Positions 31,446 to 51,892 of a stretch of 64,000 nucleotides of DNA are shown here, piece by piece; position 1 is the first letter of the stretch, and every line of letters begins with the position of its first letter. A model generated the notes under the pieces. It was given only the letters and a program-made list of their open reading frames with translations, made no database searches and was not told where the DNA came from. The position numbers and the translations under genes are program-made. The stretch lies in IMG/VR virus record IMGVR_UViG_3300017917_001123, positions 186,001 to 250,000 of that record. One strand, 5' to 3'.

Positions 31446-31736
31446 TCAGACCAGTTCTTCGTCTACGGCCTTAAGGTCGAAGTCAAAGCCTTCTGCTTCC
31501 AGCTCAGCGATCGCTTCGTTGAACAGACTCTCTAACTGACGCAGGCTAGCCGCACGGGCCCGGTCCTTTGTACGCTTACGTAGTGCACTGCCCTTAGCGT
31601 AGACTATAGCATAGTGCTCACTACAGTAGCTCTTGCCTGCGAGTGTAGCACAGCCGCAGTAGGGTGTAGGCTTAAGCCTGTTAGACATGTCCTGTGGATC
31701 GTAGTCTGGGCCTAGGTATTGGCATGTGTTAGTCAT
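31446..31736 (-). CDS. GcrA C-terminal-domain-like Zn protein
   Basis: TCQYLG...YCG......SYCSEH..IVY parallels GcrA C.WP.G...FCG...YC..H...AY. Confidence 0.6.
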   Translation of the reverse strand: MTNTCQYLGPDYDPQDMSNRLKPTPYCGCATLAGKSYCSEHYAIVYAKGSALRKRTKDRARAASLRQLESLFNEAIAELEAEGFDFDLKAVDEELV

Positions 31737-32617: not shown

Positions 32618-32662
32618 TTGTGGTGTCCTTATGTAGTTGTCTAAGTGTGTATTATACTGCCG

Positions 32663-32884
32663 TTATCGGTAGCTGTCAATCAATTCTTTTACCGAATTGT
32701 CGACTTCGTTGACCTCGTCCAGGAATGCCCAAAGCATCATAGTGATCACAATGCGAGCATCAACGGCGTCTGCTTCGGGGAGTGTGCGGACAAAACGATC
32801 CACATCCTCCCGGGAGCCCATGCCCCAAATCAGATCAGCCAGAATGCGCTGTTTGGCGTTCAGGCCCTCGATCTGGATCATCAT
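32663..32884 (-). CDS. Early hypothetical protein
   Basis: 73 aa, coupled to the upstream gene. Confidence 0.7.
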   Translation of the reverse strand: MMIQIEGLNAKQRILADLIWGMGSREDVDRFVRTLPEADAVDARIVITMMLWAFLDEVNEVDNSVKELIDSYR

Positions 32885-33153
32885 ACTGCCTCCAGCATGT
32901 TAGCTGGCACTCGCCACAGACCCTGTGCGGTACGGACTGTGATGTACTTGATGGCGATCTTTTCCACAGAACCCGTCATGTCCACACCGCGCTTGGTAGA
33001 GTGGAAACGAACGGCCTGCCCAATCTTCAGTGAGCGTTTTACACTCTTCTGGAGGCTAGCACGGGCAAATTTGATGGCATCGATCATGCTTCCCAGTTCA
33101 GTGTCAGTCCAGTTGCCAAACATGATCGCAGAGTTGACTTGCTTGATATCCAT
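32881..33153 (-). CDS. Early hypothetical protein with SH3/KOW-like C-terminus
   Basis: LKIGQAVRF...GSVEKI...WRVPANML. Own promoter and RBS. Confidence 0.75.
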   Translation of the reverse strand: MDIKQVNSAIMFGNWTDTELGSMIDAIKFARASLQKSVKRSLKIGQAVRFHSTKRGVDMTGSVEKIAIKYITVRTAQGLWRVPANMLEAV

Positions 33154-33225
33154 TTGTGAGCTCCTTTGTTTCAGTGTATGTGTGTATTATACGGTCTAGA
33201 ATTGGTTTTGTCAACCAAAGACCCT

Positions 33226-33435
33226 TCAACAATCAGGGTCAAAATCCATCCACTCAGTGAGCTCATCGGGCTGGCCGTCGTCCTCGTATTCGTCTTCGTC
33301 GAGGATGTCGTTGGCACGCATCATATCAGCCACATCGTCTTCACTCATGTAAGCCAGGGCCATCTCTGCGACTGCTTGGGCAGAGATCAAACCTTCGTCC
33401 ATCATCTCAATCAGCTTGTTGGTCTGTGTACGCAT
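33226..33435 (-). CDS. Small very acidic early protein
   Basis: Own promoter and RBS. Ends EWMDFDPDC. Confidence 0.75.
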   Translation of the reverse strand: MRTQTNKLIEMMDEGLISAQAVAEMALAYMSEDDVADMMRANDILDEDEYEDDGQPDELTEWMDFDPDC

Positions 33436-33523
33436 CTTGGGCTCCTTTTGTTTAGTGTATGTGTGTATTATACGGCCAATTTACCAGTTTGTCAACCCCT
33501 TTGACTGTTGTATTTTTGCCACA

Positions 33524-33709
33524 CTAGTCAATCTGTACGTCAATCAGCTTGCCGTCCCTAAAGATGTAGTACTCGTTGATGCGACCGTAATAGGCCCAGA
33601 TACAGCCATTGCCTTCTGTGAGGGTATAGCTGGTGATGCCCTTTTGCTTGAGTTCCTCTGTGACAACCATGACTTCCAGAGGATTGAGCCTAGGATGAAT
33701 GCTGATCAT
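33524..33709 (-). CDS. Early hypothetical protein
   Basis: ATG 33709 follows the upstream stop. Confidence 0.6.
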   Translation of the reverse strand: MISIHPRLNPLEVMVVTEELKQKGITSYTLTEGNGCIWAYYGRINEYYIFRDGKLIDVQID

Positions 33710-33710
33710 A

Positions 33711-33959
33711 TCAACCCCAGTCCTTCTTGTCGCCGTTGCGTTCGTTGTCGTCGTATCCGGCCATGTACTCAGTGACTTCATCCTCAGTCAAGTCAGTGAC
33801 TTCTGGGAAGTTGTAGGTACCGTTGGGGAACCAGTGAGGCTTAGGGCCACGGCCGTAATAGCTGTCGGCACTTCCACGATCGTAGAGGCTACCATGACGA
33901 CCACGATCAAACTGGACGCCCTTAAGGGCACGAACAACCTTTTCCTTTTCGGTAAACAT
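33711..33959 (-). CDS. Early hypothetical protein
   Basis: HGSLYDRGSADSYYGR...EYMAGY. Confidence 0.75.
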   Translation of the reverse strand: MFTEKEKVVRALKGVQFDRGRHGSLYDRGSADSYYGRGPKPHWFPNGTYNFPEVTDLTEDEVTEYMAGYDDNERNGDKKDWG

Positions 33960-34135
33960 TAGATTTCCTCCTTGATCATCAGTGTGCCCATGTACATCAA
34001 CATCAGGCTAGTCACTGCCACGCCAATGCTGGCAATCAGGTGCGATGTTTCGATGCTGTTCTCAACACCACCGACTCCGAAGCCTGCGCCAACCAAGCCA
34101 ACGATAAATGCCACTGCGCCAATCTTTTGTTTCAT
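33959..34135 (-). CDS. Small two-TM membrane protein
   Basis: Two hydrophobic segments. Own promoter and RBS. Confidence 0.7.
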   Translation of the reverse strand: MKQKIGAVAFIVGLVGAGFGVGGVENSIETSHLIASIGVAVTSLMLMYMGTLMIKEEI

Positions 34136-34316
34136 ATTCAGCTCCTGTTTGTTTAGTGTATGTGTGTAGTATAGCTTCAATTTACCACTTTGTCAACCGT
34201 TTTTAGGACCTGTTGTGTAAAAACAACACCCCCTTCGATTCGCTGATAAAGCTCTGCGACTGCCTGTACATAGAAACGCATAATGCGGCCCTTGCTGGTA
34301 ATCAGTGTGTATTCCA

Positions 34317-34493
34317 TCAACGATCCTTCATACGCTTGAACACAGCCATCATCTCTTTGTCATTCTCCAGCTTCTTGCGGAGCTTCTCCCAAGCACGATC
34401 CTCATCCAAGTGTTCGTTGTTCACAGAACGGCCGTTGCTCAGGTCCATGTTCCGCTTGTCCCACTTGGCCTGTTGCTTCTTGGAAATCTTCAT
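34317..34493 (-). CDS. Small early protein
   Basis: Promoter plus AGGAG. Ends VFKRMKDR. Confidence 0.65.
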   Translation of the reverse strand: MKISKKQQAKWDKRNMDLSNGRSVNNEHLDEDRAWEKLRKKLENDKEMMAVFKRMKDR

Positions 34494-34656
34494 TGCTTTG
34501 CTCCTTGCTATGTGTGTATTATACAACCGGTTTTACCAAATGTCAACCAAAAGATCTGTTGTATTTTTGCCACAAAAGGTGAACCCCGCGTACTTCACAG
34601 TAGGCAGGGTTCGGGGGTTGCCCGGGACACTACCCCCGGGACTTTGGAGCGATCGT

Positions 34657-34932
34657 TTAGAGTGTGATGCCCATTGCTTCGGCTTTGTAGCCTAGAGCAA
34701 CGATACGGCGTGATGGGCGACCCAACTCGTATTCAGTAACGGTAACGCCATTGCCTGCTGTGCGTGAGTTCGCATAAACAGCATAACCAGCTTGGCGGAT
34801 ACGGCTTGCTTCTGCGCTGATGTTGCCAATGCCGAAACGCTTCTTGGCTTCGCTTTGCGTCAACTTCTGACCAGCTTGAAGTGCTGTAAACAATTTACCT
34901 GTTTTTGTTTCTGGATTAATTCTCTTTAACAT
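34657..34932 (-). CDS. Winged helix-turn-helix protein
   Basis: KLFTALQAGQKLTQSEAKKRFGIGNISAEASRIRQAGYAV followed by a beta-wing. Confidence 0.7.
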   Translation of the reverse strand: MLKRINPETKTGKLFTALQAGQKLTQSEAKKRFGIGNISAEASRIRQAGYAVYANSRTAGNGVTVTEYELGRPSRRIVALGYKAEAMGITL

Positions 34933-34987
34933 ATTTTTTTCCTCTATATAAAGGCTGACTACTGCCAGCGTTCTACTATTATAGCAC

Positions 34988-35434
34988 CTAGGCCAGGCCT
35001 TGTCTAGCTTTTTGGAGTTTTTCCTCCTGCGCCATTGCCCAAGCCCGATCAAAATTAGGGCTAGAAACTCTATCTGTAAGCCAATTGGTAAATCCATCAA
35101 TCAAAGGCAGGCGCATAGCTATTTCGTCTGACTTCTCCCACCAACTGTAATCAATATCAGGGCCTTCACGGGTAACACCTACTTGGCGCAGACCTGATTG
35201 CTTGAGCAGGACGGTGTGCTTCCATTTGCGTAGGACAACATCCTCAACCTCACGCCAATGACGTAGTGCCCAGGACTCTACTTCATCGCCCCGCTGTTCT
35301 AGCTCAACAATGAGTCCACGAACAGCATCCAGTCTACGACCAAGGGCTTCAATCTCAGCATCTGCTTGAGCCCAGTCCTTATAGAACTGTGGAGTTACAT
35401 ATTCAACTGTTCTTTTTGATCGAAACATTGGCAC
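34988..35434 (-). CDS. Early hypothetical protein (start uncertain)
   Basis: ORF in minus-strand operon. Confidence 0.55.
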   Translation of the reverse strand: MPMFRSKRTVEYVTPQFYKDWAQADAEIEALGRRLDAVRGLIVELEQRGDEVESWALRHWREVEDVVLRKWKHTVLLKQSGLRQVGVTREGPDIDYSWWEKSDEIAMRLPLIDGFTNWLTDRVSSPNFDRAWAMAQEEKLQKARQGLA

Positions 35435-35606
35435 GGAAGAAGGCTCCTAGGATAACCACGGCAAACCAGTTGTAGAGTGTGTAAGGGTCTTGACCAAGCA
35501 CGCCGGGGAAGAGTTGATTGAATGCCCAGATCGTTAGCAAAGGCCCGATAGCAACCACAAGGATGACTAGAGCAACGACACTGGCGATGGTAAACAGACT
35601 TTTCAT
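35403..35606 (-). CDS. Small membrane protein
   Basis: Two hydrophobic helices. GGAG RBS. Confidence 0.7.
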   Translation of the reverse strand: MKSLFTIASVVALVILVVAIGPLLTIWAFNQLFPGVLGQDPYTLYNWFAVVILGAFFRANVSIKKNS

Positions 35607-35642
35607 GTATTCTCCAAGAAAGGGGCACTCTGGCCCCTACTA

Positions 35643-36080
35643 TCACATCAATGCTGGTTCAGCGTTGGCCAAAATGTCCTCGACCTTAGACATTGCTTCT
35701 GCCTCAGACTGAACAGCAGTCTTGACAGAGGCCTGACCAGTCTTGGTCTTAGCCTTAGCTTCCTTCTTAGCAGGAGCCTTAGCCTTAGCCTTAGTTGCCT
35801 TAGCCTTAGGAGCAGCCTTAGCCGGCTTAGCAGTAACGCCACGCTTGTCAGCCGCCGCTTCGAGAGCCGCTTGGACTTCTTTGTTACCGTTGGCAAAGTC
35901 GATGCTCAACAGGAACGCTACAGCGTCTTCCTTAGACATCGGGTGACGCAACTCGACGATGTCAATGTCCTTGTGGCCATTCTTGGCAAGTACTTTGACA
36001 CGCAGGGCATCGTTACAGAAACGAACCTTGAACTCACCATTCAAGCGCGAAACACCAGCATGAGAAAAAACGTTAGACAT
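35643..36080 (-). CDS. Protein with histone-H1-like Lys/Ala tail
   Basis: AKPAKAAPKAKATKAKAKAPAKK encoded by AAGGCT repeats. Confidence 0.75.
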   Translation of the reverse strand: MSNVFSHAGVSRLNGEFKVRFCNDALRVKVLAKNGHKDIDIVELRHPMSKEDAVAFLLSIDFANGNKEVQAALEAAADKRGVTAKPAKAAPKAKATKAKAKAPAKKEAKAKTKTGQASVKTAVQSEAEAMSKVEDILANAEPALM

Positions 36081-36169
36081 AAAATACCTTTCTGTGTGTG
36101 TTTAAAAAGTTAACAGCAATCTCTTACTGTTTTAATAGTATAGCACCAAAATGCCCAAAAGTCAACCCC

Positions 36170-36340
36170 TTAGGCGCCATAGTAAGGGCTGAATTCCTCA
36201 TCGGATTGTGGCTTAAATGCCACATCTTTGAGTTGTTTAACGGTCCAATCCATTGCCGCCGGATTGGGCTCAAATTCCGGCACTCCGTCCTCAGAAACAT
36301 CGTAGTCCGTGTCCTCGGTGATCATTGCGAAACGACTCAT
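36170..36340 (-). CDS. Small acidic protein (56 aa, not in ORF track)
   Basis: Manual translation MSRFAMITEDTDYDVSEDG...PYYGA. ATGA overlap with the upstream gene. Confidence 0.6.
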   Translation of the reverse strand: MSRFAMITEDTDYDVSEDGVPEFEPNPAAMDWTVKQLKDVAFKPQSDEEFSPYYGA

Positions 36341-36525
36341 AGCTCTACCTCCTCATCAATTACTTCAATGTCAGTGATCCGAAACTCACCTGCGTCTGTG
36401 CTGACCCCACAAAACGCATCTCGGAAACTTTGGTTCTCAGCTAGGAAGTTATAGACATCCTGCTTGTCAGTGCCCTCAGGCACTTCAATCTCTTGCCTAA
36501 GGGTTGTGGTTACCATTACCTTCAT
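36337..36525 (-). CDS. Small acidic protein
   Basis: ATGA-coupled 62 aa ORF. Confidence 0.65.
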   Translation of the reverse strand: MKVMVTTTLRQEIEVPEGTDKQDVYNFLAENQSFRDAFCGVSTDAGEFRITDIEVIDEEVEL

Positions 36526-36908
36526 TCGTCTGCCTCCAGTGCTTCGTGTTCAAACGCATCAGTCAGCAAGCCGTTAAACTCGCCGTAGAACTCAACATAC
36601 CACTTGCCGTCTTTGCGGAGGATGTAGTTGTATTCCTCTCCTTGTGCTTCGCGACGGTACTCTGCGAAGTCCTTGTACATACGCTGAGGGCAGTCCTCGC
36701 CACGTTCCTTGTAGAAAGTACAACCGCTAACAGTTTCGTCCAGCGAGCTCATGTCGCCGTTGTCCAACAGCTCGCGGACCAGGAACGGGTCTGTGTAGTG
36801 GTTCTGCAGAATCTTGCCGTTGTGATCCAAGTAGCCGTCCCAGTGGCAGTAAATTTGACCAACAGTACCGTCTGCGTACTCCAGGGCGATAGTAGAACGA
36901 GTTGCCAT
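36522..36908 (-). CDS. Phage early hypothetical protein
   Basis: MATRSTI...IYCHWDGY..HNG motif. Own promoter. Confidence 0.8.
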   Translation of the reverse strand: MATRSTIALEYADGTVGQIYCHWDGYLDHNGKILQNHYTDPFLVRELLDNGDMSSLDETVSGCTFYKERGEDCPQRMYKDFAEYRREAQGEEYNYILRKDGKWYVEFYGEFNGLLTDAFEHEALEADE

Positions 36909-36989
36909 TTATGAGCTCCTTTTGTTTCAGTGTGTATGTATTATATGACCAATTTACCAGTTTGTCAACCAACCCTACAGCCTGTAGGG

Positions 36990-37352
36990 TTATTGTTGCT
37001 CAAAAGCCACAGTAACGTCGACCTCAATGTCCGTAACATCGCCAGCAAGGTCAAACTTCAAGCCGGTAACAGCCGCGCCGTATTGTGCGGCCTTAAGGCG
37101 GCGCTCAACTTCGTGGCGCAGGTCGCCCAGCATATCGTTGAGAAAGTCCTGTGCGCTGTCTTTAACGCCTTTCAGCGTCTCTTGGATGCCGTTGCGGCTC
37201 ATGTCCTCTTGCCCGTCTACGATCATGTCGATAAACGCTTCGGTCTGACCAACGAGGGCTTGCTCAACAATAGCGTCGATCAGCTCGCGCTTTGCCCACA
37301 GGATCTCGCTGGCCTTAAAGGTCTGCTCACGTGCCTTGTAAACAACAGTCAT
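36990..37352 (-). CDS. Early hypothetical protein
   Basis: Own promoter and RBS. Confidence 0.75.
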   Translation of the reverse strand: MTVVYKAREQTFKASEILWAKRELIDAIVEQALVGQTEAFIDMIVDGQEDMSRNGIQETLKGVKDSAQDFLNDMLGDLRHEVERRLKAAQYGAAVTGLKFDLAGDVTDIEVDVTVAFEQQ

Positions 37353-37409
37353 TTCTTGCTCCTTTTCCTAACTGTCTAGCCTATAGTATAACACCGGTTT
37401 TACCACTTG

Positions 37410-37655
37410 TCAACCGATATCTGCAGTAACCCTGTTCTCTGTAGGGTTATAGGTCAGGAACACTTTGCCAAAGGTAGCACCGCGCCCGTCTTCGTCGTGG
37501 TACTCTACTTTGTAGCAAAACTGTCCGCCGTTGGTTATGCCCAGGAACTTGGCACCCTTGAACGCCATCATCTTGTAACCGCAGGAGTCCAAGGTCATAG
37601 CTAAGGTGTGGGTGCTGTAGCTGGTTAGGAGTTTGAGTGTTTCAGCAGTAATCAT
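37410..37655 (-). CDS. Early hypothetical protein
   Basis: ATGA-coupled. Stop lies in the next promoter's TTGACA. Confidence 0.7.
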   Translation of the reverse strand: MITAETLKLLTSYSTHTLAMTLDSCGYKMMAFKGAKFLGITNGGQFCYKVEYHDEDGRGATFGKVFLTYNPTENRVTADIG

Positions 37656-37897
37656 CCCAGCACCACCACTTCTGTGCCCTCAACAACAGGCTCGCCTTCG
37701 TCATCGTAGTCAAAGTCGTCTTGGTCTACGACCTTGTGCATACGGTGGTAGTCGCTGTACTTGACATAGCCTACCTCTACGCTGTCTACAGTAGGAGCCA
37801 CTTGAGTGCGCCAGTGGTCGCCGTAGTTGTATTGGAAGTGGACTTCGGCGTCCGGGTTCTCCATTTGTAGCAGTTCAATGAGCTCGGAAACTTTCAT
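37652..37897 (-). CDS. Small acidic early protein
   Basis: MKVSELIELL...PDAEV N-terminus. Confidence 0.75.
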   Translation of the reverse strand: MKVSELIELLQMENPDAEVHFQYNYGDHWRTQVAPTVDSVEVGYVKYSDYHRMHKVVDQDDFDYDDEGEPVVEGTEVVVLG

Positions 37898-38142
37898 GCT
37901 TGCTCCTTAAAGTAAACGACTTTGATGCGTCCGTTAGTTTGTACGAAAGCACAGTTGTCTTCAAACTGTACATCCGGATGGGCTAGGACCTGCTTAGTAA
38001 ACATTTTAACAGTTCGCACGTTAACGGCACCCTGCCAATCCTCGCGGGCCACGCCCTCATTGTAACTGTACTTGCCGCGGCAACCGCACATGCAACCTAC
38101 TTTGCCCGAATAAACTTTTGCAACTTTGCTGACGTTTAACAT
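37894..38142 (-). CDS. Early protein with CMCGC motif
   Basis: YSGKVGCMCGCRGKY. Own promoter and RBS. Confidence 0.75.
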   Translation of the reverse strand: MLNVSKVAKVYSGKVGCMCGCRGKYSYNEGVAREDWQGAVNVRTVKMFTKQVLAHPDVQFEDNCAFVQTNGRIKVVYFKEQA

Positions 38143-38238
38143 TTCTGCTCCTGCTTGTTTAGTGTATGTGTGTAGTATAACACAAATGGTTTTACCTGTC
38201 AACCCCTTTTATAAAAGCCCTTTCGGGCTGTAGGGTTA

Positions 38239-38388
38239 TTAGGCAGGTACTACTTTAATAAGCATAAAACTGTTTAGGCTGTTAAGTTCCTGATGGAACG
38301 CGGCTACAGCTTGTTTACGTGTGCAAGGGCGTGTTAGGGCTGTATGCACTTGGTTTTTGTAGTAGTAATGTATAACGTATTGTTTCAT
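38239..38388 (-). CDS. 49 aa basic early protein (not in ORF track)
   Basis: Manual translation MKQYVIHYYYKNQVHTALTRPCTRKQAVAAFHQELNSLNSFMLIKVVPA. Own promoter and AGGAG. Confidence 0.7.
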   Translation of the reverse strand: MKQYVIHYYYKNQVHTALTRPCTRKQAVAAFHQELNSLNSFMLIKVVPA

Positions 38389-38438
38389 GGTCGCTCCTTT
38401 AGTGTATGTGTGTAGTATAACACACTTTTACCAAAGTG

Positions 38439-38660
38439 TCAACCCCAAGCGTTATATAACCCTATAGCGCATACGGATATAGCTACAACGTTAACAATGA
38501 ACTGTGGCTTATTTGCCACACGTATAGTCCATGTCAAGTACAGTAGCCCGCCTAGCAAACCAAACAGGGGGTCCAACTTTAGCTCCCTGTAAAAGTTCAT
38601 CAACACGTACATTGCCAAGATGCAGGCAGTGCCTGCCCACTGTAGTACTGTATTAAGCAT
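38439..38660 (-). CDS. Small three-TM membrane protein
   Basis: Hydrophobic. ATG overlaps the upstream stop. Confidence 0.7.
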   Translation of the reverse strand: MLNTVLQWAGTACILAMYVLMNFYRELKLDPLFGLLGGLLYLTWTIRVANKPQFIVNVVAISVCAIGLYNAWG

Positions 38661-38832
38661 TGTCAAATTCCATTACGTCACAACGCAAGTCGTCTACAAT
38701 GTCCTCAATCCTATTGTGCGTCTCATAGCACACGTCACTGTCACCCAGCACCTCTTGTATTAATGCGTCCGCATCCTCTAGCAAATCTATTGCCTCACGC
38801 AGTTTAGCTGCCTTTTGTTTTGCTGTTAACAT
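38653..38832 (-). CDS. 59 aa acidic helical early protein (not in ORF track)
   Basis: Manual translation MLTAKQKAAKLREAIDLLEDADALIQEVLGDSDVCYETHNRIEDIVDDLRCDVMEFDNA. Own promoter and AGGAG. Confidence 0.75.
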   Translation of the reverse strand: MLTAKQKAAKLREAIDLLEDADALIQEVLGDSDVCYETHNRIEDIVDDLRCDVMEFDNA

Positions 38833-38917
38833 GTTCGCTCCTTGTTGTTTAGTGTATGTGTGTAGTATAGCACAGTTTTACCACTTTGTCAACTGTGCTA
38901 TACAATAACCCTATGCT

Positions 38918-39283
38918 TTAGTCAACTACGTGCACGTCAGCAAAACTAGCATAGCCAAACTTAGCTTCCCAGCTAGCAATAAAGTCTCTGCCTACGTCTA
39001 AGCTAACAAAGTCATCACCCTGCATGCCCTGCTCGCTATAGCACAAGTCTACAACAAGCCCATGCTCTGTAATAAACTGCATTAAGTCTATTTTAAATTG
39101 TTTGTCTGTGTAAATTAGCCCGTCTTTATAAACGTCCCAAGTGTCTGTGTTAAAAAACACACGCAGTTCCCCATACTCCTTGTCCTCGCTAACAAAGCCC
39201 AAGCGCATGTCTGTAATCTCTACAGCTTTTTGCACGTTGCTCCAGTAGCCATCGCCGCTAGTGTTAAAAATAACTTTTTGCAT
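38918..39283 (-). CDS. Acidic early protein, 121 aa, proline-free
   Basis: TSGDGYWS...GLIYTD...YSEQGMQGDDFVSLDV. Own promoter and RBS. Confidence 0.8.
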   Translation of the reverse strand: MQKVIFNTSGDGYWSNVQKAVEITDMRLGFVSEDKEYGELRVFFNTDTWDVYKDGLIYTDKQFKIDLMQFITEHGLVVDLCYSEQGMQGDDFVSLDVGRDFIASWEAKFGYASFADVHVVD

Positions 39284-39382
39284 TTGTTTGCTCCTTGCAG
39301 TGTTTAAGTGTGTAGTATAGCACCAATTTACCACTTTGTCAACTACTACGTAAAAAAACCCTACGCAGGGTAGGGCTATTGT

Positions 39383-39655
39383 TTAAATGTTAGCTATAAC
39401 ACGAACGTATTGGAATCCGGCGCAACGGGTAGCAAAATTGCGTACAGAACCCGAACGCTTTACAGGGTTTTTAATTGTACTACGCAAAAAGTTATACAAT
39501 ACATCGGCGGAACTGGCATTGTTTAAAACAAAAGTAACACTACGACGCGGATTACTAGTGTTTGCTTTTGTTTTAAGCGTACGGTCGGTATATGTACGTA
39601 CATAGTTTACATTTGCTGCACGTGCTACAGCGCGGACTTGTTTAGTGCTTAACAT
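39383..39655 (-). CDS. Basic early protein, 90 aa, glutamate-free
   Basis: Own promoter and AGGAG. Confidence 0.7.
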   Translation of the reverse strand: MLSTKQVRAVARAANVNYVRTYTDRTLKTKANTSNPRRSVTFVLNNASSADVLYNFLRSTIKNPVKRSGSVRNFATRCAGFQYVRVIANI

Positions 39656-39703
39656 ACTTGCTCCTTTAGTGTCTGTGTAGTATAGCACCAATTTACCAGT
39701 TTG

Positions 39704-40228
39704 TCAAGTCTTTTTGTAAAAAATATGCTGTCCAATCTGTTGTATTTTCACAACACTCCTTGACCAAATAGGTTCTTTAATGTAGTCCGCATGATAGAAG
39801 GTACTATGTTCCAACCCTGCTACCCTATAGCCCTCCTGGAGCACCTTGTGAGCAACCTCCTTGCTTTCTGCCCACAAAGGCCCTTTAGGTTGAGCATAGC
39901 GTTTCTTCTTGTCCAATGTCCAGCTGAACTGAGCCCGAGCATAGACAACCTTACATATATCAGTACCCCAGCGTTTCTCCTTTAGTCGATTGAGTGTTAC
40001 CTGTGCGACAGCAAACTTACCTAACCGGTCCTCCACACCGGCTTCATAGAAAATGTTCTTGGCCAAACAGTCTGCTTCAGCAGAAGTATGCTGAACACGC
40101 TGTTGAGTCTTGATCAAATAGATCTTGATCTCTTGTATGTCATCGTGAAGGGTAGAGATCTCCAGTTGCTGGAACGCCAGGATGGCGAACATGGCCACCC
40201 CAGCTAGGATCTTCCATATGCCGTTCAC
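39704..40228 (-). CDS. Cell wall hydrolase (SleB/Hydrolase_2 family)
   Basis: CLAKNIFYEAG, AVAQVTLNR, ICKVVY..AQFSW, IGQHIFY. N-terminal TM segment. Confidence 0.9.
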   Translation of the reverse strand: MNGIWKILAGVAMFAILAFQQLEISTLHDDIQEIKIYLIKTQQRVQHTSAEADCLAKNIFYEAGVEDRLGKFAVAQVTLNRLKEKRWGTDICKVVYARAQFSWTLDKKKRYAQPKGPLWAESKEVAHKVLQEGYRVAGLEHSTFYHADYIKEPIWSRSVVKIQQIGQHIFYKKT

Positions 40229-40851
40229 TTGTGTGGCTCCAAGTTGTTCTTCTCTACACCGTCCTTATACCAGTCGGTGAGTTCCTCGTCCTCTTCGTCC
40301 TCATACTCGGCCATAGACTCGGAGATGCCATACTCATCATCCAGTTCGTCGCCAACGACATCACGCACGGTTTTAGAAGTCTCACCGCCGAACTCAATAC
40401 ACTCGTCACTGCCGTTATACCAACGACCTACATAGGCCATGCCTGGTTCGTAGTAGGTAGCCTCTACTTCAAAGCCGTCATCTACTAGGGCCTCGTAGAT
40501 GCCTACGGGCGGGGCCCACGCAGAGTCAAAGCCGAACTCAATGGTGTTGTTCTCAATCTTTATATCAGGGTCGTAGGCATCAACATCCCACTTGGTGCCC
40601 CAATGATTCACGCAGAAGTCATACCAGTTGGCCACACCATATTTGGCAATGTTCTCGGCACTCCGGCGCTCGAGCTCAATCTGGTCCGGATTCGTTTCGT
40701 CACCAACTCGACCTGCTACAATGTTCAGGTCCTCTGGAATCGGAACCACATGCTTACAGAAGTTGCCTTCCTTAATGGCCTCAACGAGGGCTTCAAGTTT
40801 CTGGGTATCTTCGTGGCTGATTACCACACGGTTGTTGCACCAATTAGGCAT
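40225..40851 (-). CDS. DUF1281/YubB-like ferredoxin-fold protein
   Basis: MPNWCNN, WYDFCVNHWGTKWD, FDSAWAPP, YYEPG motifs. Confidence 0.8.
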   Translation of the reverse strand: MPNWCNNRVVISHEDTQKLEALVEAIKEGNFCKHVVPIPEDLNIVAGRVGDETNPDQIELERRSAENIAKYGVANWYDFCVNHWGTKWDVDAYDPDIKIENNTIEFGFDSAWAPPVGIYEALVDDGFEVEATYYEPGMAYVGRWYNGSDECIEFGGETSKTVRDVVGDELDDEYGISESMAEYEDEEDEELTDWYKDGVEKNNLEPHK

Positions 40852-40861
40852 AGTAGGCTCC

Positions 40862-41125
40862 TTAGTTGAATTCGTAGAAAGTGACGCTAGGATCGATGCT
40901 TTGGAGTTCTTGAGCACAACGGCGCAGGAACTGGGCACGGGCACGGACTTGGCTTGCGGGCAGTTCGCCATCGCAGGTAAGGTTCTCTGGGCTAAGATCC
41001 GCATCCAGCGAATCCGCAATCTTTTGACGGTCCTGGGCGTTGAGCAGGCTGAGCTCCTTGCCGTTGAAAATTTTGGACCAGCTGTTTTTCATTTCAACAT
41101 AGGTTTCCAAGTTCTGAATATTCAT
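40862..41125 (-). CDS. Early hypothetical protein
   Basis: LSPENLTCDGE motif. Own promoter and RBS. Confidence 0.75.
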   Translation of the reverse strand: MNIQNLETYVEMKNSWSKIFNGKELSLLNAQDRQKIADSLDADLSPENLTCDGELPASQVRARAQFLRRCAQELQSIDPSVTFYEFN

Positions 41126-41182
41126 TTTCGCTCCTGTTTCGTTAGTGTCTAGTGTATAGTATAACATCGGTTTTACCGGATG

Positions 41183-41377
41183 TCAACCCCTTTTGGTAAC
41201 TTTTTTAACTAATACGAAAGTACGACCACGCAAATCGAACTTCAAAGGCTTATTGAACACCTTGTGCTCGTTGGTGTCTTTTTTGACATAGGCTAGGCAC
41301 TTGTCCCCGTCTAGGAGGTACAGGTGGTTACAGTCCGACCCGTCCTCCCAAACTGTAGTCTCACGCATCCACTTCAT
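41183..41377 (-). CDS. Early hypothetical protein
   Basis: ETTVW...NHLYLL...FDLRGRTF. Confidence 0.7.
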   Translation of the reverse strand: MKWMRETTVWEDGSDCNHLYLLDGDKCLAYVKKDTNEHKVFNKPLKFDLRGRTFVLVKKVTKRG

Positions 41378-41631
41378 TACATGCTCCAGTAGGCTTCTGA
41401 GCTGGGCGAGCAATAGCGCGGAGTGTCATAGCGTTCCTTATACTCAGCACCGCCCATCAAGTTCTTGCGAGTTACATAAGTTTCGTGGATTTCGCGAATG
41501 TATCCTGGGCGAACTGGGTTGGCTCGCTCCACAGCCGCCAGCGTCATGTCCGCAAAGTCCGTCTTGGACACCAGCTTCATGCCCTCTTTGCATCGCTTGT
41601 CCAACTTATAAATTTCTACGGTATATTCCAT
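41377..41631 (-). CDS. Early hypothetical protein
   Basis: Ends DTPRYCSPSSEAYWSM. Own promoter. Confidence 0.75.
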   Translation of the reverse strand: MEYTVEIYKLDKRCKEGMKLVSKTDFADMTLAAVERANPVRPGYIREIHETYVTRKNLMGGAEYKERYDTPRYCSPSSEAYWSM

Positions 41632-41755
41632 GTCGCTCTCCTTAGTGTCTAGTGTATAGTATAACACAGGTTTTACCACTTGTCAACCAAAAAAAGAGGG
41701 TGTTGCTTTTATACAACACCCCCATAAAGGGCCTGCGTTGCACAGGCCGGAGCAA

Positions 41756-42103
41756 TTAATCCAATCGGCTACCTGCGTAGGCTTCCACGCCCAACATCTG
41801 CTTCAGGAACTCTGCGGCCGCCTCGGCACCCGCTTCCAAAGTGTCCACGTTCTGGACGCCCAAACCACTGGGGTTCCACAGCTGAAGTCCACCACCGTAA
41901 GCAGGACGGAAACCTGCCTCCTTCAGTGCCATACCCAGTTTGGTGTTGCCACGAACCTTGTAGACCGTAACCCAAGCAAAGCCACAGGCGTATTGGTCAC
42001 GTCCGCCCAGCTTCTCCTGGAAGAACTTGGTTGCCGCTTGACGGGCTTCCTGCTTGGCACCCTCAACAAAACTCAGAACCTGCTCTTTAGTGAATCCACT
42101 CAT
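41756..42103 (-). CDS. Early hypothetical protein
   Basis: ACGFAWV...AYAGSRLD. Own promoter. Confidence 0.75.
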   Translation of the reverse strand: MSGFTKEQVLSFVEGAKQEARQAATKFFQEKLGGRDQYACGFAWVTVYKVRGNTKLGMALKEAGFRPAYGGGLQLWNPSGLGVQNVDTLEAGAEAAAEFLKQMLGVEAYAGSRLD

Positions 42104-42160
42104 CTTTCGCTCCTTTAGTTAACTATCTAGCCTATAGTATAGCACCGGTTTTACCTTTTG

Positions 42161-42859
42161 TCAACCGACAATTGGAATAACCCTACGAACGAATCCGGTA
42201 TTGTCCTTCTTAGCACGGCCCTTGGCTTTCAACCCAGCGATAACACCCTTAGGGTCCAAAAAGCGCAGGTCAGTGTCATCAGCATTGAAAACAGGGCGGC
42301 CCATGTAAGCTTCGGGCAGTTTATCAAAGACCATAGCCACGTTCATGCCCTGCGCCACAGCCTTAGCCACGTCCGCATCGTTACCGTCTGCGGCACTGAA
42401 GGTCAAGTGGTAGTTCTTAAGGTGCGACACTTTGCGGCCCAGGACCTTAGTGTAGTCATAGAACTGTACTTCCGGAAACTTCTCAATGATACCGTACTTC
42501 TCCCAGCTCAAGTCCGATGTACCATTCAAGCGGAACACGGGCGTCAAACCCAACTTCGCGGCCTGCTTGATGCCCAGTTTAATGTCTGCTTCCAAGTCCT
42601 TCATGAAAGCATCGCGGTTCTCAAAGAAGTACTTGGTCTTGCGGATGCGAGCCTGCTGGATCACGTTGGTGTTCTCACCTTTGCGGAACATGCCGCCACG
42701 ACCGGCAGTATTAAGGCAAGCGGCTGTACAACCTGCGGTGCGCTTAGGGCATACTTCTTTGCCCGACAAGTCAGCAGGAGCAAGGTGTAGGATGTAGCTC
42801 AGGTAACCCAGCTTCGTACCCTTCTGGATCTTAGGATTTGCAGTGCTCAATAGTTTCAT
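42161..42859 (-). CDS. GP88-family radical-SAM-like protein
   Basis: CPKRTAGCTAAC (Cx6Cx3C), FRLNGTSD, QFYDYTK, YHLTFS motifs. Confidence 0.75.
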   Translation of the reverse strand: MKLLSTANPKIQKGTKLGYLSYILHLAPADLSGKEVCPKRTAGCTAACLNTAGRGGMFRKGENTNVIQQARIRKTKYFFENRDAFMKDLEADIKLGIKQAAKLGLTPVFRLNGTSDLSWEKYGIIEKFPEVQFYDYTKVLGRKVSHLKNYHLTFSAADGNDADVAKAVAQGMNVAMVFDKLPEAYMGRPVFNADDTDLRFLDPKGVIAGLKAKGRAKKDNTGFVRRVIPIVG

Positions 42860-42930
42860 CTCTTGCTCCTTATTAATGTTTCTAGTCTCTAGTATAACAC
42901 CGGTTTTACCACTTGTCAACCAATACCCGT

Positions 42931-43269
42931 TCAATCTCCACGGGTATCTGTATTCAGCATGGGCTTCAACTTGCGGCGGAGTTCCACTTCCAAGTCGTGT
43001 CCTGCCTGCTTGCCACGTGCCGTGCCCAGAACGCGAACACCTATTTCAGTCTTGTCGTTGAGCTCACGCAGGGCCACGCAAAGGAGCCAATTCTTGCTTT
43101 CAGTCTTTGCGCGATAGAAATGCTTGGCTGCACGTGTCCGTGCGCTCTTAAGAGCTGTGGACTCTGTTTTGGCTGTGACACCAACATAAGTCATGCCGTT
43201 GACCGTAAGCTCATAGACTACATGAGTACGATCTGCACGCTTTTTACGGGGACGCTTTTCTAAGTTCAT
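42931..43269 (-). CDS. GIY-YIG-like protein (leaderless start)
   Basis: VVYEL..NGMTYVGVT...R...E...LN. ATG 6 nt after the -10. Confidence 0.6.
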   Translation of the reverse strand: MNLEKRPRKKRADRTHVVYELTVNGMTYVGVTAKTESTALKSARTRAAKHFYRAKTESKNWLLCVALRELNDKTEIGVRVLGTARGKQAGHDLEVELRRKLKPMLNTDTRGD

Positions 43270-43350
43270 GAGTGTAGTATAACACGGTTTTACCACTCTG
43301 TCAACCCCTAAAGAATACCCGAGTGGGCCGTAGGGTTTCAGAAATTCCGG

Positions 43351-43379
43351 TTGACATTCGGTAAAACCTGTGCTATACT
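43351..43379 (+). promoter_or_regulatory. Divergent plus-strand copy of the early promoter
   Basis: TTGACA-ttcGGTAAAacctgtgc-TATACT. Confidence 0.85.
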
Positions 43380-43513
43380 GTAGGCACAATGAGAGATAAG
43401 AAGAAAGCCATAAGGGCACGAGGGTTCGAACAGACTTGCTGGGGATGGACGGCGAGGGCCACCCCCCTATTTGGCTCGGTGATGAAAATATAGTAGGCTG
43501 CTCAAAATAGCCG

Positions 43514-43546
43514 CAAAAAAACCCTAGGCCAAATACCTCCTAGGGT
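43514..43546 (-). terminator. Minus-strand terminator
   Basis: ACCCTAGG-10nt-CCTAGGGT followed by a U run on the minus strand. Confidence 0.8.
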
Positions 43547-43781
43547 CTCCCTGCCCGGGTCTACCGCAACGTGACTCCGAACCGTTTGCGCTCAGTCTAC
43601 TCTAGGCCCAGGGCCTTCGACTCTAGCACAGTGACTTCTGTGGCAATTCACAGCACCTAAGGTCTGTACTGTTACCAGTATTCTTTCACGCTAGGCGTTT
43701 AACCGCATTATCAGTCTAGAGCAATTCCGTCACCTTAGTCATCGGCCGAATTGTTAACTGTTTCGTGTGCTGTTACGGCAC
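43514..43781 (-). ncRNA. Candidate structured non-coding RNA (~265 nt) downstream of tRNA
   Basis: No minus-strand ORF of note. Bounded by a TAAGTA box and a terminator. Multiple 6-7 bp complementary segments. Confidence 0.5.
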
Positions 43782-43802
43782 AAAATACTTAGCTCTGCCC
43801 GG

Positions 43803-43879
43803 TGGTGGGCCCAACAGGACTCGAACCTGTGACCAAGCGATTATGAGTCGCCTGCTCTAACCAACTGAGCTATAGGCCC
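43803..43879 (-). tRNA. tRNA-Ile2 (CAT, lysidine type)
   Basis: GGGCCTATAGCTCAGTTGGTTAGAGCAGGCGACTCATAATCGCTTGGTCACAGGTTCGAGTCCTGTTGGGCCCACCA. Cloverleaf with encoded CCA. Anticodon arm matches E. coli ileX as recalled. Confidence 0.9.
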
Positions 43880-46563: not shown

Positions 46564-47193
46564 ATGAGTTTTAATGGTAATCCAAATATTGAACAGCATC
46601 GTCTAAAGCCCCAGGGCGAACGCTACTACTATTCTAGTACTGAGTGGTTTTTTAACCTACAGGATCTAGATCGTTTGCGGGGTCTAGTGGGGCAGTTAGA
46701 AGCTGGTACTGTTCGCGCCTCGCATGAGCCGCAGAGTGTACAGCCTGAACTTAGATCTAGTATGGTTTCGTTTATCGAACCTACTGCGGATTCTGGTTGG
46801 CTATACGAAAAGATTGGGGAAGCTATACGTTTCCATAATCAGACCTACTATGGCTACGATATCACGGGTATTGAGCATCTACAGTTTACCGAATACCCTG
46901 CGGGCGAAGGCTTCTATAAGCCGCATATGGACTGGGGTTCTGGTATGGTTATGGGCCGCGGCGATCTTTGCCGTAAGCTATCCTTTAGCATACAGTTATC
47001 TAATCCTGATAGCTACGAAGGTGGCGACTTCCGTATTCTTAATGGGCAGGACTTTACGCAACAAAGTGAAAAATTACGGCAGTTTGGTACTATCGTTGTA
47101 TTCCCTAGCTGGATCCTACACGAAGTTACTCCTGTAACACGGGGTACTCGTCGAAGCCTAGTTGGCTGGTGTGTGGGTCCGGATTTCCGTTAA
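46564..47193 (+). CDS. 2OG-Fe(II) oxygenase (prolyl-hydroxylase/PiuC-like)
   Basis: HMD, RKLSFSIQL, YEGG, HEVTPVTRGTRRSLVGW motifs. Confidence 0.92.
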   Translation: MSFNGNPNIEQHRLKPQGERYYYSSTEWFFNLQDLDRLRGLVGQLEAGTVRASHEPQSVQPELRSSMVSFIEPTADSGWLYEKIGEAIRFHNQTYYGYDITGIEHLQFTEYPAGEGFYKPHMDWGSGMVMGRGDLCRKLSFSIQLSNPDSYEGGDFRILNGQDFTQQSEKLRQFGTIVVFPSWILHEVTPVTRGTRRSLVGWCVGPDFR

Positions 47194-47265
47194 AATTTTG
47201 TCTACCCCGATTTTTCTTTTGCAAGCCGCTTCGCGGAAGAGGGTTGGGTATAACGGAGTGGTAAA

Positions 47266-50511: not shown

Positions 50512-50536
50512 ATGGATATTTAACTTGGTATATAAC

Positions 50537-50565
50537 TTGACAGAAAATTTTCTGCCTCGTATAAT
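50537..50565 (+). promoter_or_regulatory. Consensus sigma70 promoter
   Basis: TTGACA-17-TATAAT. Confidence 0.85.
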
Positions 50566-50600
50566 TCTAACATAACTATTATAAAGGAGTCAAACTTAAT

Positions 50601-51623: not shown

Positions 51624-51634
51624 TAAATACTGAC

Positions 51635-51847: not shown

Positions 51848-51892
51848 ACCATAAAACGTTTTTAACCACTTGGCCCCCGGCTAATTAAGATT

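What the first reader, a model, noticed from the sequence alone, without database searches (positions are those of the whole stretch)
33506..41718. Operator family A: TGT(T/G)G-N8-C(A/C)ACA palindrome upstream of seven early promoters
Seen: copies start at 33506, 34211, 34557, 36207, 38503, 39738 and 41701, all with an AT-rich 8-bp core. Those at 33506 and 34557 share 19 identical bp. Gaps to the -35 are 10, 14, 10, 41, 60, 30 and 14 bp, five of them near multiples of a helical turn. Three copies lie inside coding sequence. Inference: binding site for a dimeric HTH regulator. The geometry resembles, but does not match, CRP (TGTGA-N6-TCACA).
Basis: partly seen in the sequence, partly recalled or inferred. 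Interest (0 to 1): 0.65.

Follow-up and report, generated by a model that had tools for sequence, protein, structure and literature searches.

The report
Dyad operator upstream of phage early promoters
An 18-bp two-fold-symmetric DNA word lies just upstream of 8 of about 19 near-identical early promoters in a 332-kb freshwater jumbo phage and in its relatives. It is most likely the binding site of a small phage-encoded winged-helix dimer, which makes it a new example of an ordinary kind of phage control element.

Summary
TGTKG-N8-CMACA occurs 8 times, not 7: the site at 36994 was missed. All 8 lie within 8.2 kb, against 0.32 expected by chance, and the rest of the 331.6-kb phage genome has only one loose match. 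The real unit is 6-N6-6: TGTKGY-N6-RCMACA.

Each copy lies 10-60 bp upstream of the -35 of a minus-strand sigma70-type promoter. These promoters belong to a family of about 19 near-identical promoter/leader/SD cassettes. Related jumbo-phage contigs carry the motif 172 times, against 5 for a reversed control, and 87% of non-redundant copies lie 7-110 bp upstream of such a promoter.

Several results point to a DNA site read by a protein rather than an RNA hairpin or terminator:
- The two half-sites vary largely independently.
- Only 36 of 79 distinct sites can form the full stem.
- About half the sites lie inside translated CDS.
- Synonymous codon positions are frozen to keep the motif.

The best candidate reader is the only recognisable DNA-binding protein of the region, a conserved 91-aa winged-helix protein that is predicted to dimerise. 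The best-conserved site sits upstream of its own operon. Binding is inferred, not shown.

The parts
33506..33523 (-). Motif copy 1. It starts right after the stop codon of the upstream gene and lies 10 bp upstream of the -35 at 33495.
34211..34228 (-). Motif copy 2, 14 bp upstream of the -35 at 34196.
34557..34574 (-). Motif copy 3, 10 bp upstream of the -35 at 34546. It directly follows a conserved two-hairpin element downstream of the wHTH gene.
36207..36224 (-). Motif copy 4. It lies inside the 3' end of a 56-aa ORF (codons V-A-F-K-P-Q), 41 bp upstream of the -35 of the operon that ends with the wHTH gene. This is the best-conserved copy, present in 15/15 orthologs.
36994..37011 (-). It covers the last six codons of a 120-aa ORF. 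A CCCTAC/GTAGGG hairpin follows it, and the -35 at 36968 lies 25 bp downstream.
38503..38520 (-). Motif copy 6. It lies inside a small hydrophobic ORF whose TGA stop overlaps the -35 at 38442. The gap of 60 is identical in 27 related loci.
39738..39755 (-). Motif copy 7. It lies inside the C-terminal coding part of a Hydrolase_2 (SleB-like) cell-wall hydrolase, 30 bp upstream of the -35 at 39707.
41701..41718 (-). Motif copy 8. This is the only copy extended by G/C flanks and followed by a T-run, so it looks like a terminator (-18.5 kcal/mol with flanks). It lies 14 bp upstream of the -35 at 41686.
33467..33495 (-). Early-type sigma70 promoter (TTGACA-17-TATAAT) downstream of copy 1.
34168..34196 (-). 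Promoter downstream of copy 2.
34518..34546 (-). Promoter downstream of copy 3.
36137..36165 (-). Promoter (TTGACT-17-TATACT, with a distinct long leader) downstream of copy 4. It drives the operon 36080..34657, which ends with the wHTH gene.
36940..36968 (-). Promoter downstream of copy 5.
38414..38442 (-). Promoter downstream of copy 6.
39679..39707 (-). Promoter downstream of copy 7.
41658..41686 (-). Promoter downstream of copy 8.
34657..34932 (-). Candidate reader of the motif: a 91-aa winged-helix protein (Pfam HTH_39) with a C-terminal helix predicted to mediate a symmetric homodimer.

Best explanation
The 18-bp word TGTKGY-N6-RCMACA is a double-stranded-DNA operator read by a two-fold-symmetric protein dimer. 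It is not an RNA hairpin.

It is placed 7-110 bp upstream of the -35 of a subset (8 of about 19) of the host-RNA-polymerase early promoters in a hyperplastic early-gene cluster. The preferred position is about 10 bp upstream, which puts the site centre near -55.

The most likely reader is the phage's own 91-aa winged-helix protein (34657-34932, minus strand). It is made from an early operon whose promoter carries the best-conserved copy of the site, so it would autoregulate and then modulate the other marked early promoters.

The sign of regulation is not resolved. I lean towards damping or shut-off from an upstream position (as phi29 p4 does at A2c), or blocking of read-through from the unit upstream. 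My reason is that the target promoters already have consensus -35/-10 elements and the site never overlaps them.

Shown: the motif, its specificity for this region, its conservation, its promoter association, nucleotide-level selection, the weak hairpin constraint, and the fold and predicted dimer of the candidate protein. Inferred: that a protein binds the site, which protein it is, and what binding does.
For: (1) Specificity. There are 8 sites in 8.2 kb against 0.32 expected per 64 kb. No other strict match exists in 331.6 kb, and the top 8 PWM scores are these sites.

(2) Conservation. Loci of related phages, whose early proteins are only 40-80% identical, hold 133 copies in 591 kb. Whole contigs of relatives hold 172 copies against 5 for the reversed control, clustered in one few-kb region per contig.

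(3) Promoter link. All 8 window sites lie 10-60 bp upstream of a promoter, and 98 of 112 non-redundant sites lie 7-110 bp upstream of TTGACW-N16-18-TAYAHT. None overlaps the core promoter.

(4) Not a hairpin. Perfect palindromes number 34 of 79 against 25 expected if the halves were independent. Mixed sites give G-A and C-A mismatches. Only 36 of 79 fold into the full stem, and 18 of 79 are weaker than -2 kcal/mol. Only 1 of 8 has a T-run, and terminator-like sites are not enriched (14 against 12.3). Where a true terminator hairpin is present it is a separate element between the motif and the -35.

(5) DNA-level selection in translated sequence. In 15 of 15 orthologs found by protein similarity, the motif is kept. 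The third base of the preceding codon is T across five different amino acids (background 38% T). Pro is always CCA (14/14; background 21%). Val is always GTG or GTT.

(6) Candidate reader. It is the only significant DNA-binding-domain hit among the 30 early-region ORFs scanned against Pfam, and the only HTH_39 match in the genome. It has a winged-helix fold with pLDDT 82. The homodimer score is 0.75 against a best control of 0.00; this mark was reached by 20 of 30 known homodimers and 1 of 23 known monomers; runs agree 100% and pLDDT is 93. It is present at 59-83% identity in 27 of 49 fragments of relatives. In 12 of 12 loci it lies in the operon whose promoter carries the always-conserved site.

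(7) Hint of co-variation. Two lineages have a diverged recognition helix (59% and 32% identity). They have 0 TGTGGC among 22 half-sites, against 47% elsewhere.
Against: - There is no binding or expression data. No RNA run holds the region.
- The site-to-promoter distance is variable without robust helical phasing. This is unlike classical class I activators.
- The site never overlaps -35/-10, which is unlike classical repressors.
- Only 8 of about 19 promoters carry it, and no obvious feature distinguishes them.
- The motif is not fully symmetric. The promoter-distal half is preferentially TGTGGC and the proximal half TGTTGT (16-23 against 4), and the spacer is A-rich on the sense strand. Within a half-site, positions 4 and 6 are coupled (TGTGGT is almost absent).
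- The wHTH link is circumstantial. Every relative seems to have both the protein and the motif, so co-occurrence cannot discriminate. The co-variation rests on two lineages.
- At the orthologous spot downstream of the wHTH gene, the motif is present in only 5 of 13 loci.
- The host is unknown, so a host factor cannot be excluded.
Confidence: 0.55

Rival explanations
1. The motif is a host transcription-factor site. The phage places the operator of a host dimeric regulator (CRP/FNR-like, TyrR-like, PpsR/CrtJ-like or other) upstream of some early promoters, coupling early expression to host physiology.
For: The TGT-N12-ACA geometry is shared with PpsR/CrtJ operators, which also show an ACG variant (PMC4452267; the same variant is seen here). 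From my own knowledge it is also shared with TyrR boxes. Early promoters are read by the host polymerase, as in the nearest named relatives. The evidence for DNA-level protein binding applies equally to this reading.
Against: The inner bases (TGTKGY) do not match the published or remembered consensus of CRP, TyrR or PpsR. PpsR sites come as tandem pairs overlapping the promoter (PMC4452267), whereas these are single and upstream. Lineage-specific half-site usage tracks divergence of a phage protein. The host is unknown, and the promoter/leader cassette is absent from 596 Gb of bacterial genomes, so no host regulon could be examined.
Confidence: 0.15
2. The motif is a PeSL-type stem-loop. It would be the hairpin half of a composite terminator/promoter cassette, acting as an RNA 3'-end, terminator or stability element for the upstream unit.
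For: The overall architecture matches PeSLs: a palindrome just upstream of near-consensus sigma70 early promoters, plus a conserved SD, repeated between small ORFs in a hyperplastic region (PMC4122927). The motif sits at the 3' end of each unit. Copy 8 is a good terminator. The spacer is A-rich on the sense strand. There is a slight excess of perfect palindromes (34 against 25).
Against: Only 36 of 79 sites form the stem. The common mixed sites break it on either strand. Only 1 of 8 has a T-run. About half the sites are inside translated CDS. The stem sequence is fixed rather than co-varying, unlike PeSL stems, which are only G-run/C-run. Separate true terminators (CCCTAC/GTAGGG or ACCCGC/GCGGGT plus T-run) lie between the motif and the -35 in many loci.
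Confidence: 0.15
3. The motif is a module-junction or recombination signal. It would mark the 5' edge of mobile promoter-gene cassettes and be where cassettes are exchanged, by short homology or by a site-specific nuclease or recombinase.
For: At site 36207, homology between the window and seven relatives begins at the motif. The upstream gene body is unrelated: an acidic 56-aa protein here, a small HTH protein in the relatives. Site pairs that are similar downstream but not upstream outnumber the reverse 39 to 3. The motif is gained and lost at orthologous positions. A conserved GIY-YIG-fold protein is the first gene of the cluster.
Against: There is one clear junction only. The much longer promoter/leader repeat (about 60 bp, near-identical) is a far better substrate for homologous exchange. 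The 39:3 asymmetry can simply reflect stronger constraint on the motif-to-promoter interval. The 112-aa GIY-YIG protein has no DNA-binding domain, and nothing links it to the motif. It resembles early host-DNA nucleases such as T4 EndoII (my own knowledge).
Confidence: 0.08

Closest known systems
PeSL cassettes (promoter-early stem-loop) of T4-type phages (PMC2839356, PMC4122927)
   Same: Repeated composite units sit between small ORFs of a hyperplastic early region. Each unit has a palindrome just upstream of a near-consensus sigma70 promoter, followed by a conserved Shine-Dalgarno and start. They are associated with module exchange.
   Different: PeSL stems are generic G-run/C-run terminator hairpins. 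This motif has fixed half-site sequences, often cannot pair, lacks a T-run in 7 of 8 copies and is often inside CDS. In this clade the true terminator hairpins (CCCTAC/GTAGGG) are a second, separate element.
P2/P4 Ogr/Delta late-promoter element TGT-N12-ACA centred near -55 (PMC3931495)
   Same: The outer pattern TGT-N12-ACA is identical. In the preferred gap-10 class the site centre falls near -55, upstream of a host-polymerase promoter.
   Different: The genome has no Ogr_Delta zinc-finger protein. The target promoters have consensus -35 boxes and look early, not activator-dependent late. The position is not fixed (gaps 7-110).
PpsR/CrtJ operators TGT-N12-ACA of purple bacteria (PMC4452267)
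   Same: The outer pattern is the same, including a TGT-N12-ACG variant.
   Different: PpsR sites occur as two palindromes 8-9 bp apart within photosynthesis promoters. These sites are single and upstream, the inner bases differ, and the host is unknown.
CRP site TGTGA-N6-TCACA
   Same: Both have TGTG...CACA outer bases and an AT-rich centre.
   Different: The spacing is two bp longer here (TGTG-N10-CACA against TGTG-N8-CACA), and half the half-sites are TGTTG.
Small dimeric winged-helix repressors (PadR-s2, ArsR/SmtB, MarR) and their 16-20-bp dyad operators; phi29 p4 acting from upstream of early promoter A2c (own knowledge)
   Same: The candidate reader is a roughly 90-aa winged helix plus one C-terminal dimerising helix, like PadR-s2. 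The operator is an 18-bp dyad. Regulation of strong early phage promoters from an upstream site has a precedent in phi29 p4.
   Different: The structural matches are generic (Z below 8, Foldseek E above 0.01) and there is no sequence relation to solved structures. Binding has not been demonstrated.

Membership tests
CRP/FNR-type operator | TGTGA-N6-TCACA: 5-bp arms separated by 6 bp, 22-bp site | tested here: not met
   The arms are 6 bp with 6 bp between them, giving TGTG-N10-CACA. 112 of 226 half-sites are TGTTG, not TGTGG.
P2 Ogr/Delta-dependent promoter element | TGT-N12-ACA dyad | tested here: met
   All copies fit, but this pattern alone is very degenerate.
P2 Ogr/Delta-dependent promoter element | Fixed position centred about -55 | tested here: not met
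   Only the gap 9-11 class (13 of 69 family gaps) puts the centre near -55. The others range up to a gap of 110.
P2 Ogr/Delta-dependent promoter element | Ogr/Delta zinc-finger activator encoded by the phage | tested here: not met
   PF04606 search of the whole 331.6-kb record gave no match at E<=1.
PpsR/CrtJ operator | Two TGT-N12-ACA palindromes 8-9 bp apart within the regulated promoter; PpsR in the host | tested here: not met
   The sites are single and upstream of -35. The host is unknown, so the protein part is not testable.
PeSL (promoter-early stem-loop) cassette | Repeated near-consensus sigma70 promoter + SD + start between small ORFs of a plastic region | tested here: met
   There are about 19 minus-strand promoters in 32.6-43.4 kb, with a near-identical spacer, leader and AAGGAG.
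PeSL (promoter-early stem-loop) cassette | Upstream element is a stem-loop acting as terminator of the preceding unit | tested here: not met
   For this motif: 36 of 79 sites form the stem, 1 of 8 has a T-run, and about half are in CDS. The feature is met by the separate CCCTAC/GTAGGG hairpins.
PeSL (promoter-early stem-loop) cassette | Coincides with indel/replacement junctions between relatives | tested here: inconclusive
   There is one clear junction at 36207 and a 39:3 asymmetry of flank similarity. No systematic breakpoint test was done.
Intrinsic terminator | GC-rich stem followed by T-run | tested here: not met
   Only 41701 qualifies. The region shows no enrichment (14 found against 12.3 in shuffles).
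Operator of a dimeric winged-helix regulator | Dyad-symmetric site with conserved arms and free spacer | tested here: met
   The information content is in positions 1-6 and 13-18. The spacer is variable but AT-rich.
Operator of a dimeric winged-helix regulator | Cognate winged-helix protein that dimerises | tested here: inconclusive
   HTH_39 protein with a winged-helix model and a predicted homodimer of 0.75 against a control of 0.00. This is a prediction only.
Operator of a dimeric winged-helix regulator | Specific binding of the protein to the site | not testable with these tools
   No protein-DNA modelling or assay was available.

The most novel reading that the evidence does not exclude
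The dyad is not a transcription operator but the boundary signal of mobile early-gene cassettes, a phage counterpart of integron attC sites. Promoter-gene units would be cut or exchanged at the motif by a dedicated phage enzyme, for instance the conserved leaderless GIY-YIG protein working with the winged-helix dimer as its targeting subunit. This would explain why the motif sits at unit ends, travels with the downstream promoter, and coincides with a homology breakpoint at 36207.
Probability: 0.06. Interest if true: 0.8.

Novelty: new member of a known kind. Interest (0 to 1): 0.42.

Why it matters
Jumbo phages related to PA5oct and Rak2 depend on the host polymerase, yet how they order early transcription is largely unknown. 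This work defines three things that can be tested in vitro or in E. coli without culturing the phage: a cis element, its target promoters, and a candidate 91-aa regulator. They come from a widespread clade of uncultured freshwater jumbo phages.

It also shows that the early cassettes of this clade have three separable parts: a sequence-specific dyad, a terminator hairpin, and a promoter with its leader. This refines the PeSL picture of how phage early regions are built and shuffled. The near-identical strong promoters plus a compact operator/repressor pair could also serve as synthetic-biology parts.

Tried and rejected
- Helical phasing of site-to-promoter distance: apparent at period 10 (p about 0.005), but lost when the gap <=11 class is removed. 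Rejected as evidence.
- RNA hairpin or terminator: rejected for the family as a whole and kept only for copy 41701.
- Ogr/Delta activator: absent.
- 'GcrA-like' protein (31446-31736): only 11.9 bits over 30 C-terminal positions, below the cut-off. Not used.
- Rfam: nothing in 31-44.5 kb except tRNA-Met.
- Expression data: no RNA run holds the region, only pond and freshwater DNA runs.
- Host identification: a scan of 596 Gb of bacterial genomes for the promoter/leader pattern gave two chance hits in gut MAGs, so the host remains unknown.
- Near-identical DNA in the named-phage collection: none.
- Co-occurrence of the wHTH gene and the motif across contigs: uninformative, because both are present throughout the clade and the contigs are fragments. 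The 326-kb record G001 proved unrelated.
- DnaA box, Fis, IHF, sigma54, parS and LexA consensus sequences were compared from memory and do not fit. No tool test was done.
- Sequence search of the wHTH profile against solved structures: no relative.
It was rerun from file references.

Full report
WHAT THE WINDOW IS. The window is bases 186,001-250,000 of a 331,570-bp virus record rated 93% complete. It encodes a tail sheath, tail tube, large terminase, UvsX-like recombinase and DnaB-like helicase. Its terminase is 50% identical to that of the Pseudomonas jumbo phage PA5oct group. PA5oct relies on the host RNA polymerase and has TTGAC/TATAATA promoters (PMC7318152). The DNA comes from pond and freshwater metagenomes, and no RNA run holds it. 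The stretch 32-44 kb has 50% G+C against about 40% elsewhere. It is packed with small minus-strand ORFs.

THE OBSERVATION. TGTKG-N8-CMACA matches 8 times in the window, all between 33506 and 41718. Chance predicts 0.32, with at most 2 in any of 100 shuffles. The whole genome has one further loose match, with G at position 6 and a non-AT-rich spacer. The reversed control gives one. The true unit is 6-N6-6, TGTKGY-N6-RCMACA, which has TGT-N12-ACA geometry. A PWM built from relatives ranks the eight sites first in the genome. The next candidates are a one-mismatch word inside a gene, and a one-mismatch copy 30 bp upstream of a TTGACT-N17-TATAAT promoter at genome position 82004.

PROMOTER CONTEXT. 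Read on the minus strand, every copy lies upstream of a member of a striking promoter family: GG-TTGACA, a conserved GGTAAA-containing 17-bp spacer, TATAAT or TATACT, a conserved ACACACATACACTAAA-type leader, AAGGAG and ATG. A consensus scan finds about 19 such minus-strand promoters between 32.6 and 43.4 kb. Only three or four family members occur elsewhere in the genome. The gaps from motif to -35 are 10, 14, 10, 41, 25, 60, 30 and 14. So 8 of about 19 promoters carry the motif. At least four copies are inside coding sequence (36207, 36994, 38503, 39738). Copy 33506 starts right after a stop codon.

RELATIVES. A scan of IMG/VR for the promoter-plus-leader pattern returned 65 loci. Their early proteins are 40-80% identical to those of the window, so DNA-level conservation there is meaningful. 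These loci hold 133 motif copies in 591 kb. Thirty-three whole contigs hold 172, against 5 for the reversed control, clustered in one few-kb region per contig. Of 112 non-redundant copies, 98 lie 7-110 bp upstream of a TTGACW-N16-18-TAYAHT promoter in the same orientation. Visual inspection shows that most of the rest also precede a weaker promoter.

DNA SITE OR HAIRPIN? Half-sites are TGTGGC (105), TGTTGT (79) and TGTTGC (33); TGTGGT is almost absent. The two halves combine nearly freely. Among 79 distinct sites, 34 are perfect palindromes against 25 expected from independent halves. The frequent mixed sites give G-A and C-A mismatches on the sense strand and are no better on the antisense strand.

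ViennaRNA folds only 36 of 79 sites into the full 6-bp stem, and 18 of 79 are weaker than -2 kcal/mol. In the window, two copies have -0.6 kcal/mol. Only copy 41701 has flanking G/C extension and a T-run. Terminator-like sites are not enriched in the region (14 against 12.3). Where real terminators occur (CCCTAC-loop-GTAGGG or ACCCGC-loop-GCGGGT with T-runs), they are separate elements lying between the motif and the -35. About half of all copies are inside translated CDS, where a small hairpin would be unwound by ribosomes.

NUCLEOTIDE-LEVEL SELECTION. The copy at 36207 lies in the last 20 codons of a small gene. All 15 distinct orthologs found by protein similarity, without reference to the motif, carry it at the same place. 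The base before the Val codon is T in 15 of 15, although the codon it ends encodes Gly, Asn, Ser, Asp or Thr; background T usage at such codons is 38%. Pro is CCA in 14 of 14 (background 21%). Val is GTG or GTT in 15 of 15. The one P-to-Q change is exactly the C/A alternative the motif allows. In-CDS copies nearly always use the frame T|GTG|GCx. That is the frame that avoids Cys and Trp codons, so the frame preference needs no special explanation.

DISTANCE AND ORIENTATION. Clustering sites into 61 ortholog families gives a preferred gap of about 10 (13 family gaps). This puts the site centre near -55. The remaining gaps spread broadly from 14 to 110. A Rayleigh test gives p about 0.005 at period 10, but p 0.27 once gaps of 11 or less are dropped. 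I therefore do not accept helical phasing.

The motif is not perfectly symmetric with respect to the promoter. A distal TGTGGC with a proximal TGTTGT occurs 16-23 times, against 4 for the reverse. The spacer is A-rich on the sense strand, and G is favoured just 5' of the site. Common variants replace the last A by G, or the proximal arm by TACACA. I have no firm explanation for this polarity. It fits an element that works directionally with the promoter.

WHO READS IT? Pfam scans of 30 early-region ORFs gave a single significant DNA-binding domain, HTH_39, in the 91-aa product of 34657-34932. It is also the only HTH_39 match in the genome. Its AlphaFold model (pLDDT 82) is a canonical winged helix plus one C-terminal helix. 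Structural neighbours are generic ArsR/MarR/PadR-type regulators with Z below 8, and no solved relative is detectable by sequence. A homodimer prediction scored 0.75 against a best control of 0.00. That mark was reached by 20 of 30 proteins solved as homodimers and 1 of 23 solved as monomers. The runs agree 100%, partner pLDDT is 93, and the interface is the C-terminal helix. This supports a symmetric dimer but does not show it.

The protein is present at 59-83% identity in 27 of 49 contig fragments of relatives. In 12 of 12 loci it is the last gene of the operon whose promoter lies 40-50 bp downstream of the always-conserved motif copy. That is the layout expected for autoregulation.

Two lineages have a diverged positional ortholog: 59% identity with four changes in the recognition helix, and 32% identity as an 81-aa wHTH. 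They have no TGTGGC among 22 half-sites, against 47% elsewhere. This is suggestive co-variation, but it rests on two lineages. No Ogr/Delta homologue exists. The 'GcrA-like' ORF is a sub-threshold match.

MODULE BOUNDARY. In the window, the gene carrying copy 36207 encodes an acidic 56-aa protein unrelated to the small HTH protein found at that position in relatives. Even so, the sequence from the motif through the stop codon and into the promoter is homologous. Site pairs alike downstream but not upstream outnumber the reverse 39 to 3. So the motif travels with the downstream promoter module, and in at least one case it marks a recombination junction, as proposed for PeSLs (PMC4122927). I treat a dedicated recombination role as a low-probability rival.

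COMPARISON WITH KNOWN SYSTEMS.
- The architecture is closest to the PeSL cassettes of T4-type phages. However, this motif fails the stem-loop/terminator criterion, which a second hairpin family in the clade does meet.
- It shares TGT-N12-ACA and, in one class, the -55 position with P2 Ogr sites (PMC3931495). The activator is absent, the promoters have consensus -35 boxes, and the position is not fixed.
- It shares the outer pattern with PpsR/CrtJ operators (PMC4452267), but not their tandem layout or inner bases.
- It is not a CRP site, because the spacing is 2 bp longer.
- Functionally, I think it works like the operator of a small dimeric winged-helix regulator acting from upstream of strong early promoters. 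From my own knowledge, phi29 p4 at A2c is the nearest mechanistic precedent.

VERDICT. The feature is real, highly non-random and conserved. Rivals are a host factor (0.15), a PeSL-type hairpin (0.15) and a recombination signal (0.08). It is a new member of a known kind, and interest is moderate.

Noticed in passing
window 32650-43380, minus strand (plus one on + at 43351-43379): About 19 near-identical sigma70-type promoters: GG-TTGACA, a GGTAAA-containing 17-bp spacer, TATAAT/TATACT, often with an extended -10 TG. They have a conserved ACACACATACACTAAA-type leader and AAGGAG, and each drives one to four small ORFs. This is a PeSL-like hyperplastic early region with 50% G+C against 40% for the rest of the genome. 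The promoter+leader pattern occurs in 65 IMG/VR loci but gives only two chance hits in 596 Gb of bacterial genomes.
   Followed up: yes
window 36971-36991, 39357-39377; half copies near 37420-37445, 38450-38460, 38900-38915, 42170-42180, 43310-43340: A second palindrome family, (A)ACCCTAC-loop-GTAGGGT(T/C), often followed by a T-run. In relatives it sits directly before GGTTGACA. These look like the true intrinsic terminators of the cassettes and are separate from the dyad studied here.
   Followed up: partly
window 34575-34655, minus strand: A conserved two-hairpin, RNA-like element lies immediately downstream of the winged-helix gene. Hairpin 1 has the invariant loop GGTAGTGT; hairpin 2 is a long stem around CTGTGAAG. 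In 9 loci, 8 of 18 predicted pairs show compensatory changes. There is no Rfam match. It may be a 3'-UTR structure or a small RNA.
   Followed up: partly
window 42931-43269, minus strand: A 112-aa protein, the most widely conserved early gene (hits in 46 loci). Its ATG lies 6-7 nt after the -10 hexamer in 19 of 19 orthologs, implying a leaderless mRNA. The AlphaFold model (pLDDT 88) best matches GIY-YIG nuclease domains (I-TevI catalytic domain TM 0.57/0.66, UvrC N-domain; Foldseek E 0.03-0.1). It has no Pfam or PHROG hit. It may be an early host-DNA nuclease like T4 EndoII.
   Followed up: partly
window 43351-43800, plus strand: A divergent copy of the early promoter points into about 420 bp without any ORF of 40 aa or more. 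This stretch contains a CCCTAGG/CCTAGGG hairpin and ends next to an oppositely oriented tRNA-Met (43803-43879). It may be a non-coding RNA. Rfam gives no meaningful match there.
   Followed up: no
window 36170-36340 vs L057, L017, L015, L020, L012, L014: The gene upstream of the wHTH operon promoter has been replaced. Relatives encode a 59-70-aa HTH-like protein (IAxxLxCPIExV...), while the window encodes an unrelated acidic protein. The last 20 or so codons, from the dyad on, are homologous. The recombination junction therefore lies at or next to the dyad.
   Followed up: partly
window 38439-38576 (to 38666), minus strand: A small hydrophobic ORF (...VANKPQFIVNVVAISVCAIGLYNAWG) is conserved with conservative substitutions in 27 loci. 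Its TGA stop is part of the next promoter's TTGACA, and it carries the dyad in frame.
   Followed up: partly
window 39704-40228, minus strand: A SleB-like cell-wall hydrolase (Pfam Hydrolase_2, 1e-21) is encoded among the early cassettes. Its stop codon also overlaps the next -35.
   Followed up: no
window 36990-37352, minus strand: A 120-aa early protein has a sub-threshold match to the B12-binding_2 cap domain (E 0.002, 18.5 bits against a cut-off of 23). This is noted only because B12-binding AerR partners with PpsR/CrtJ, whose operator shares TGT-N12-ACA. It is probably a coincidence.
   Followed up: no
window 46564-61921: A cluster of two 2OG-Fe(II) oxygenases and three radical-SAM proteins, two of them with SPASM domains. 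This suggests a peptide- or nucleotide-modification pathway carried by the phage.
   Followed up: no
genome position 82004-82021 (outside the window), plus strand: A one-mismatch copy of the dyad (C instead of the first T) lies 30 bp upstream of a TTGACT-N17-TATAAT promoter. It is the only motif-promoter pair found outside the early cluster.
   Followed up: partly
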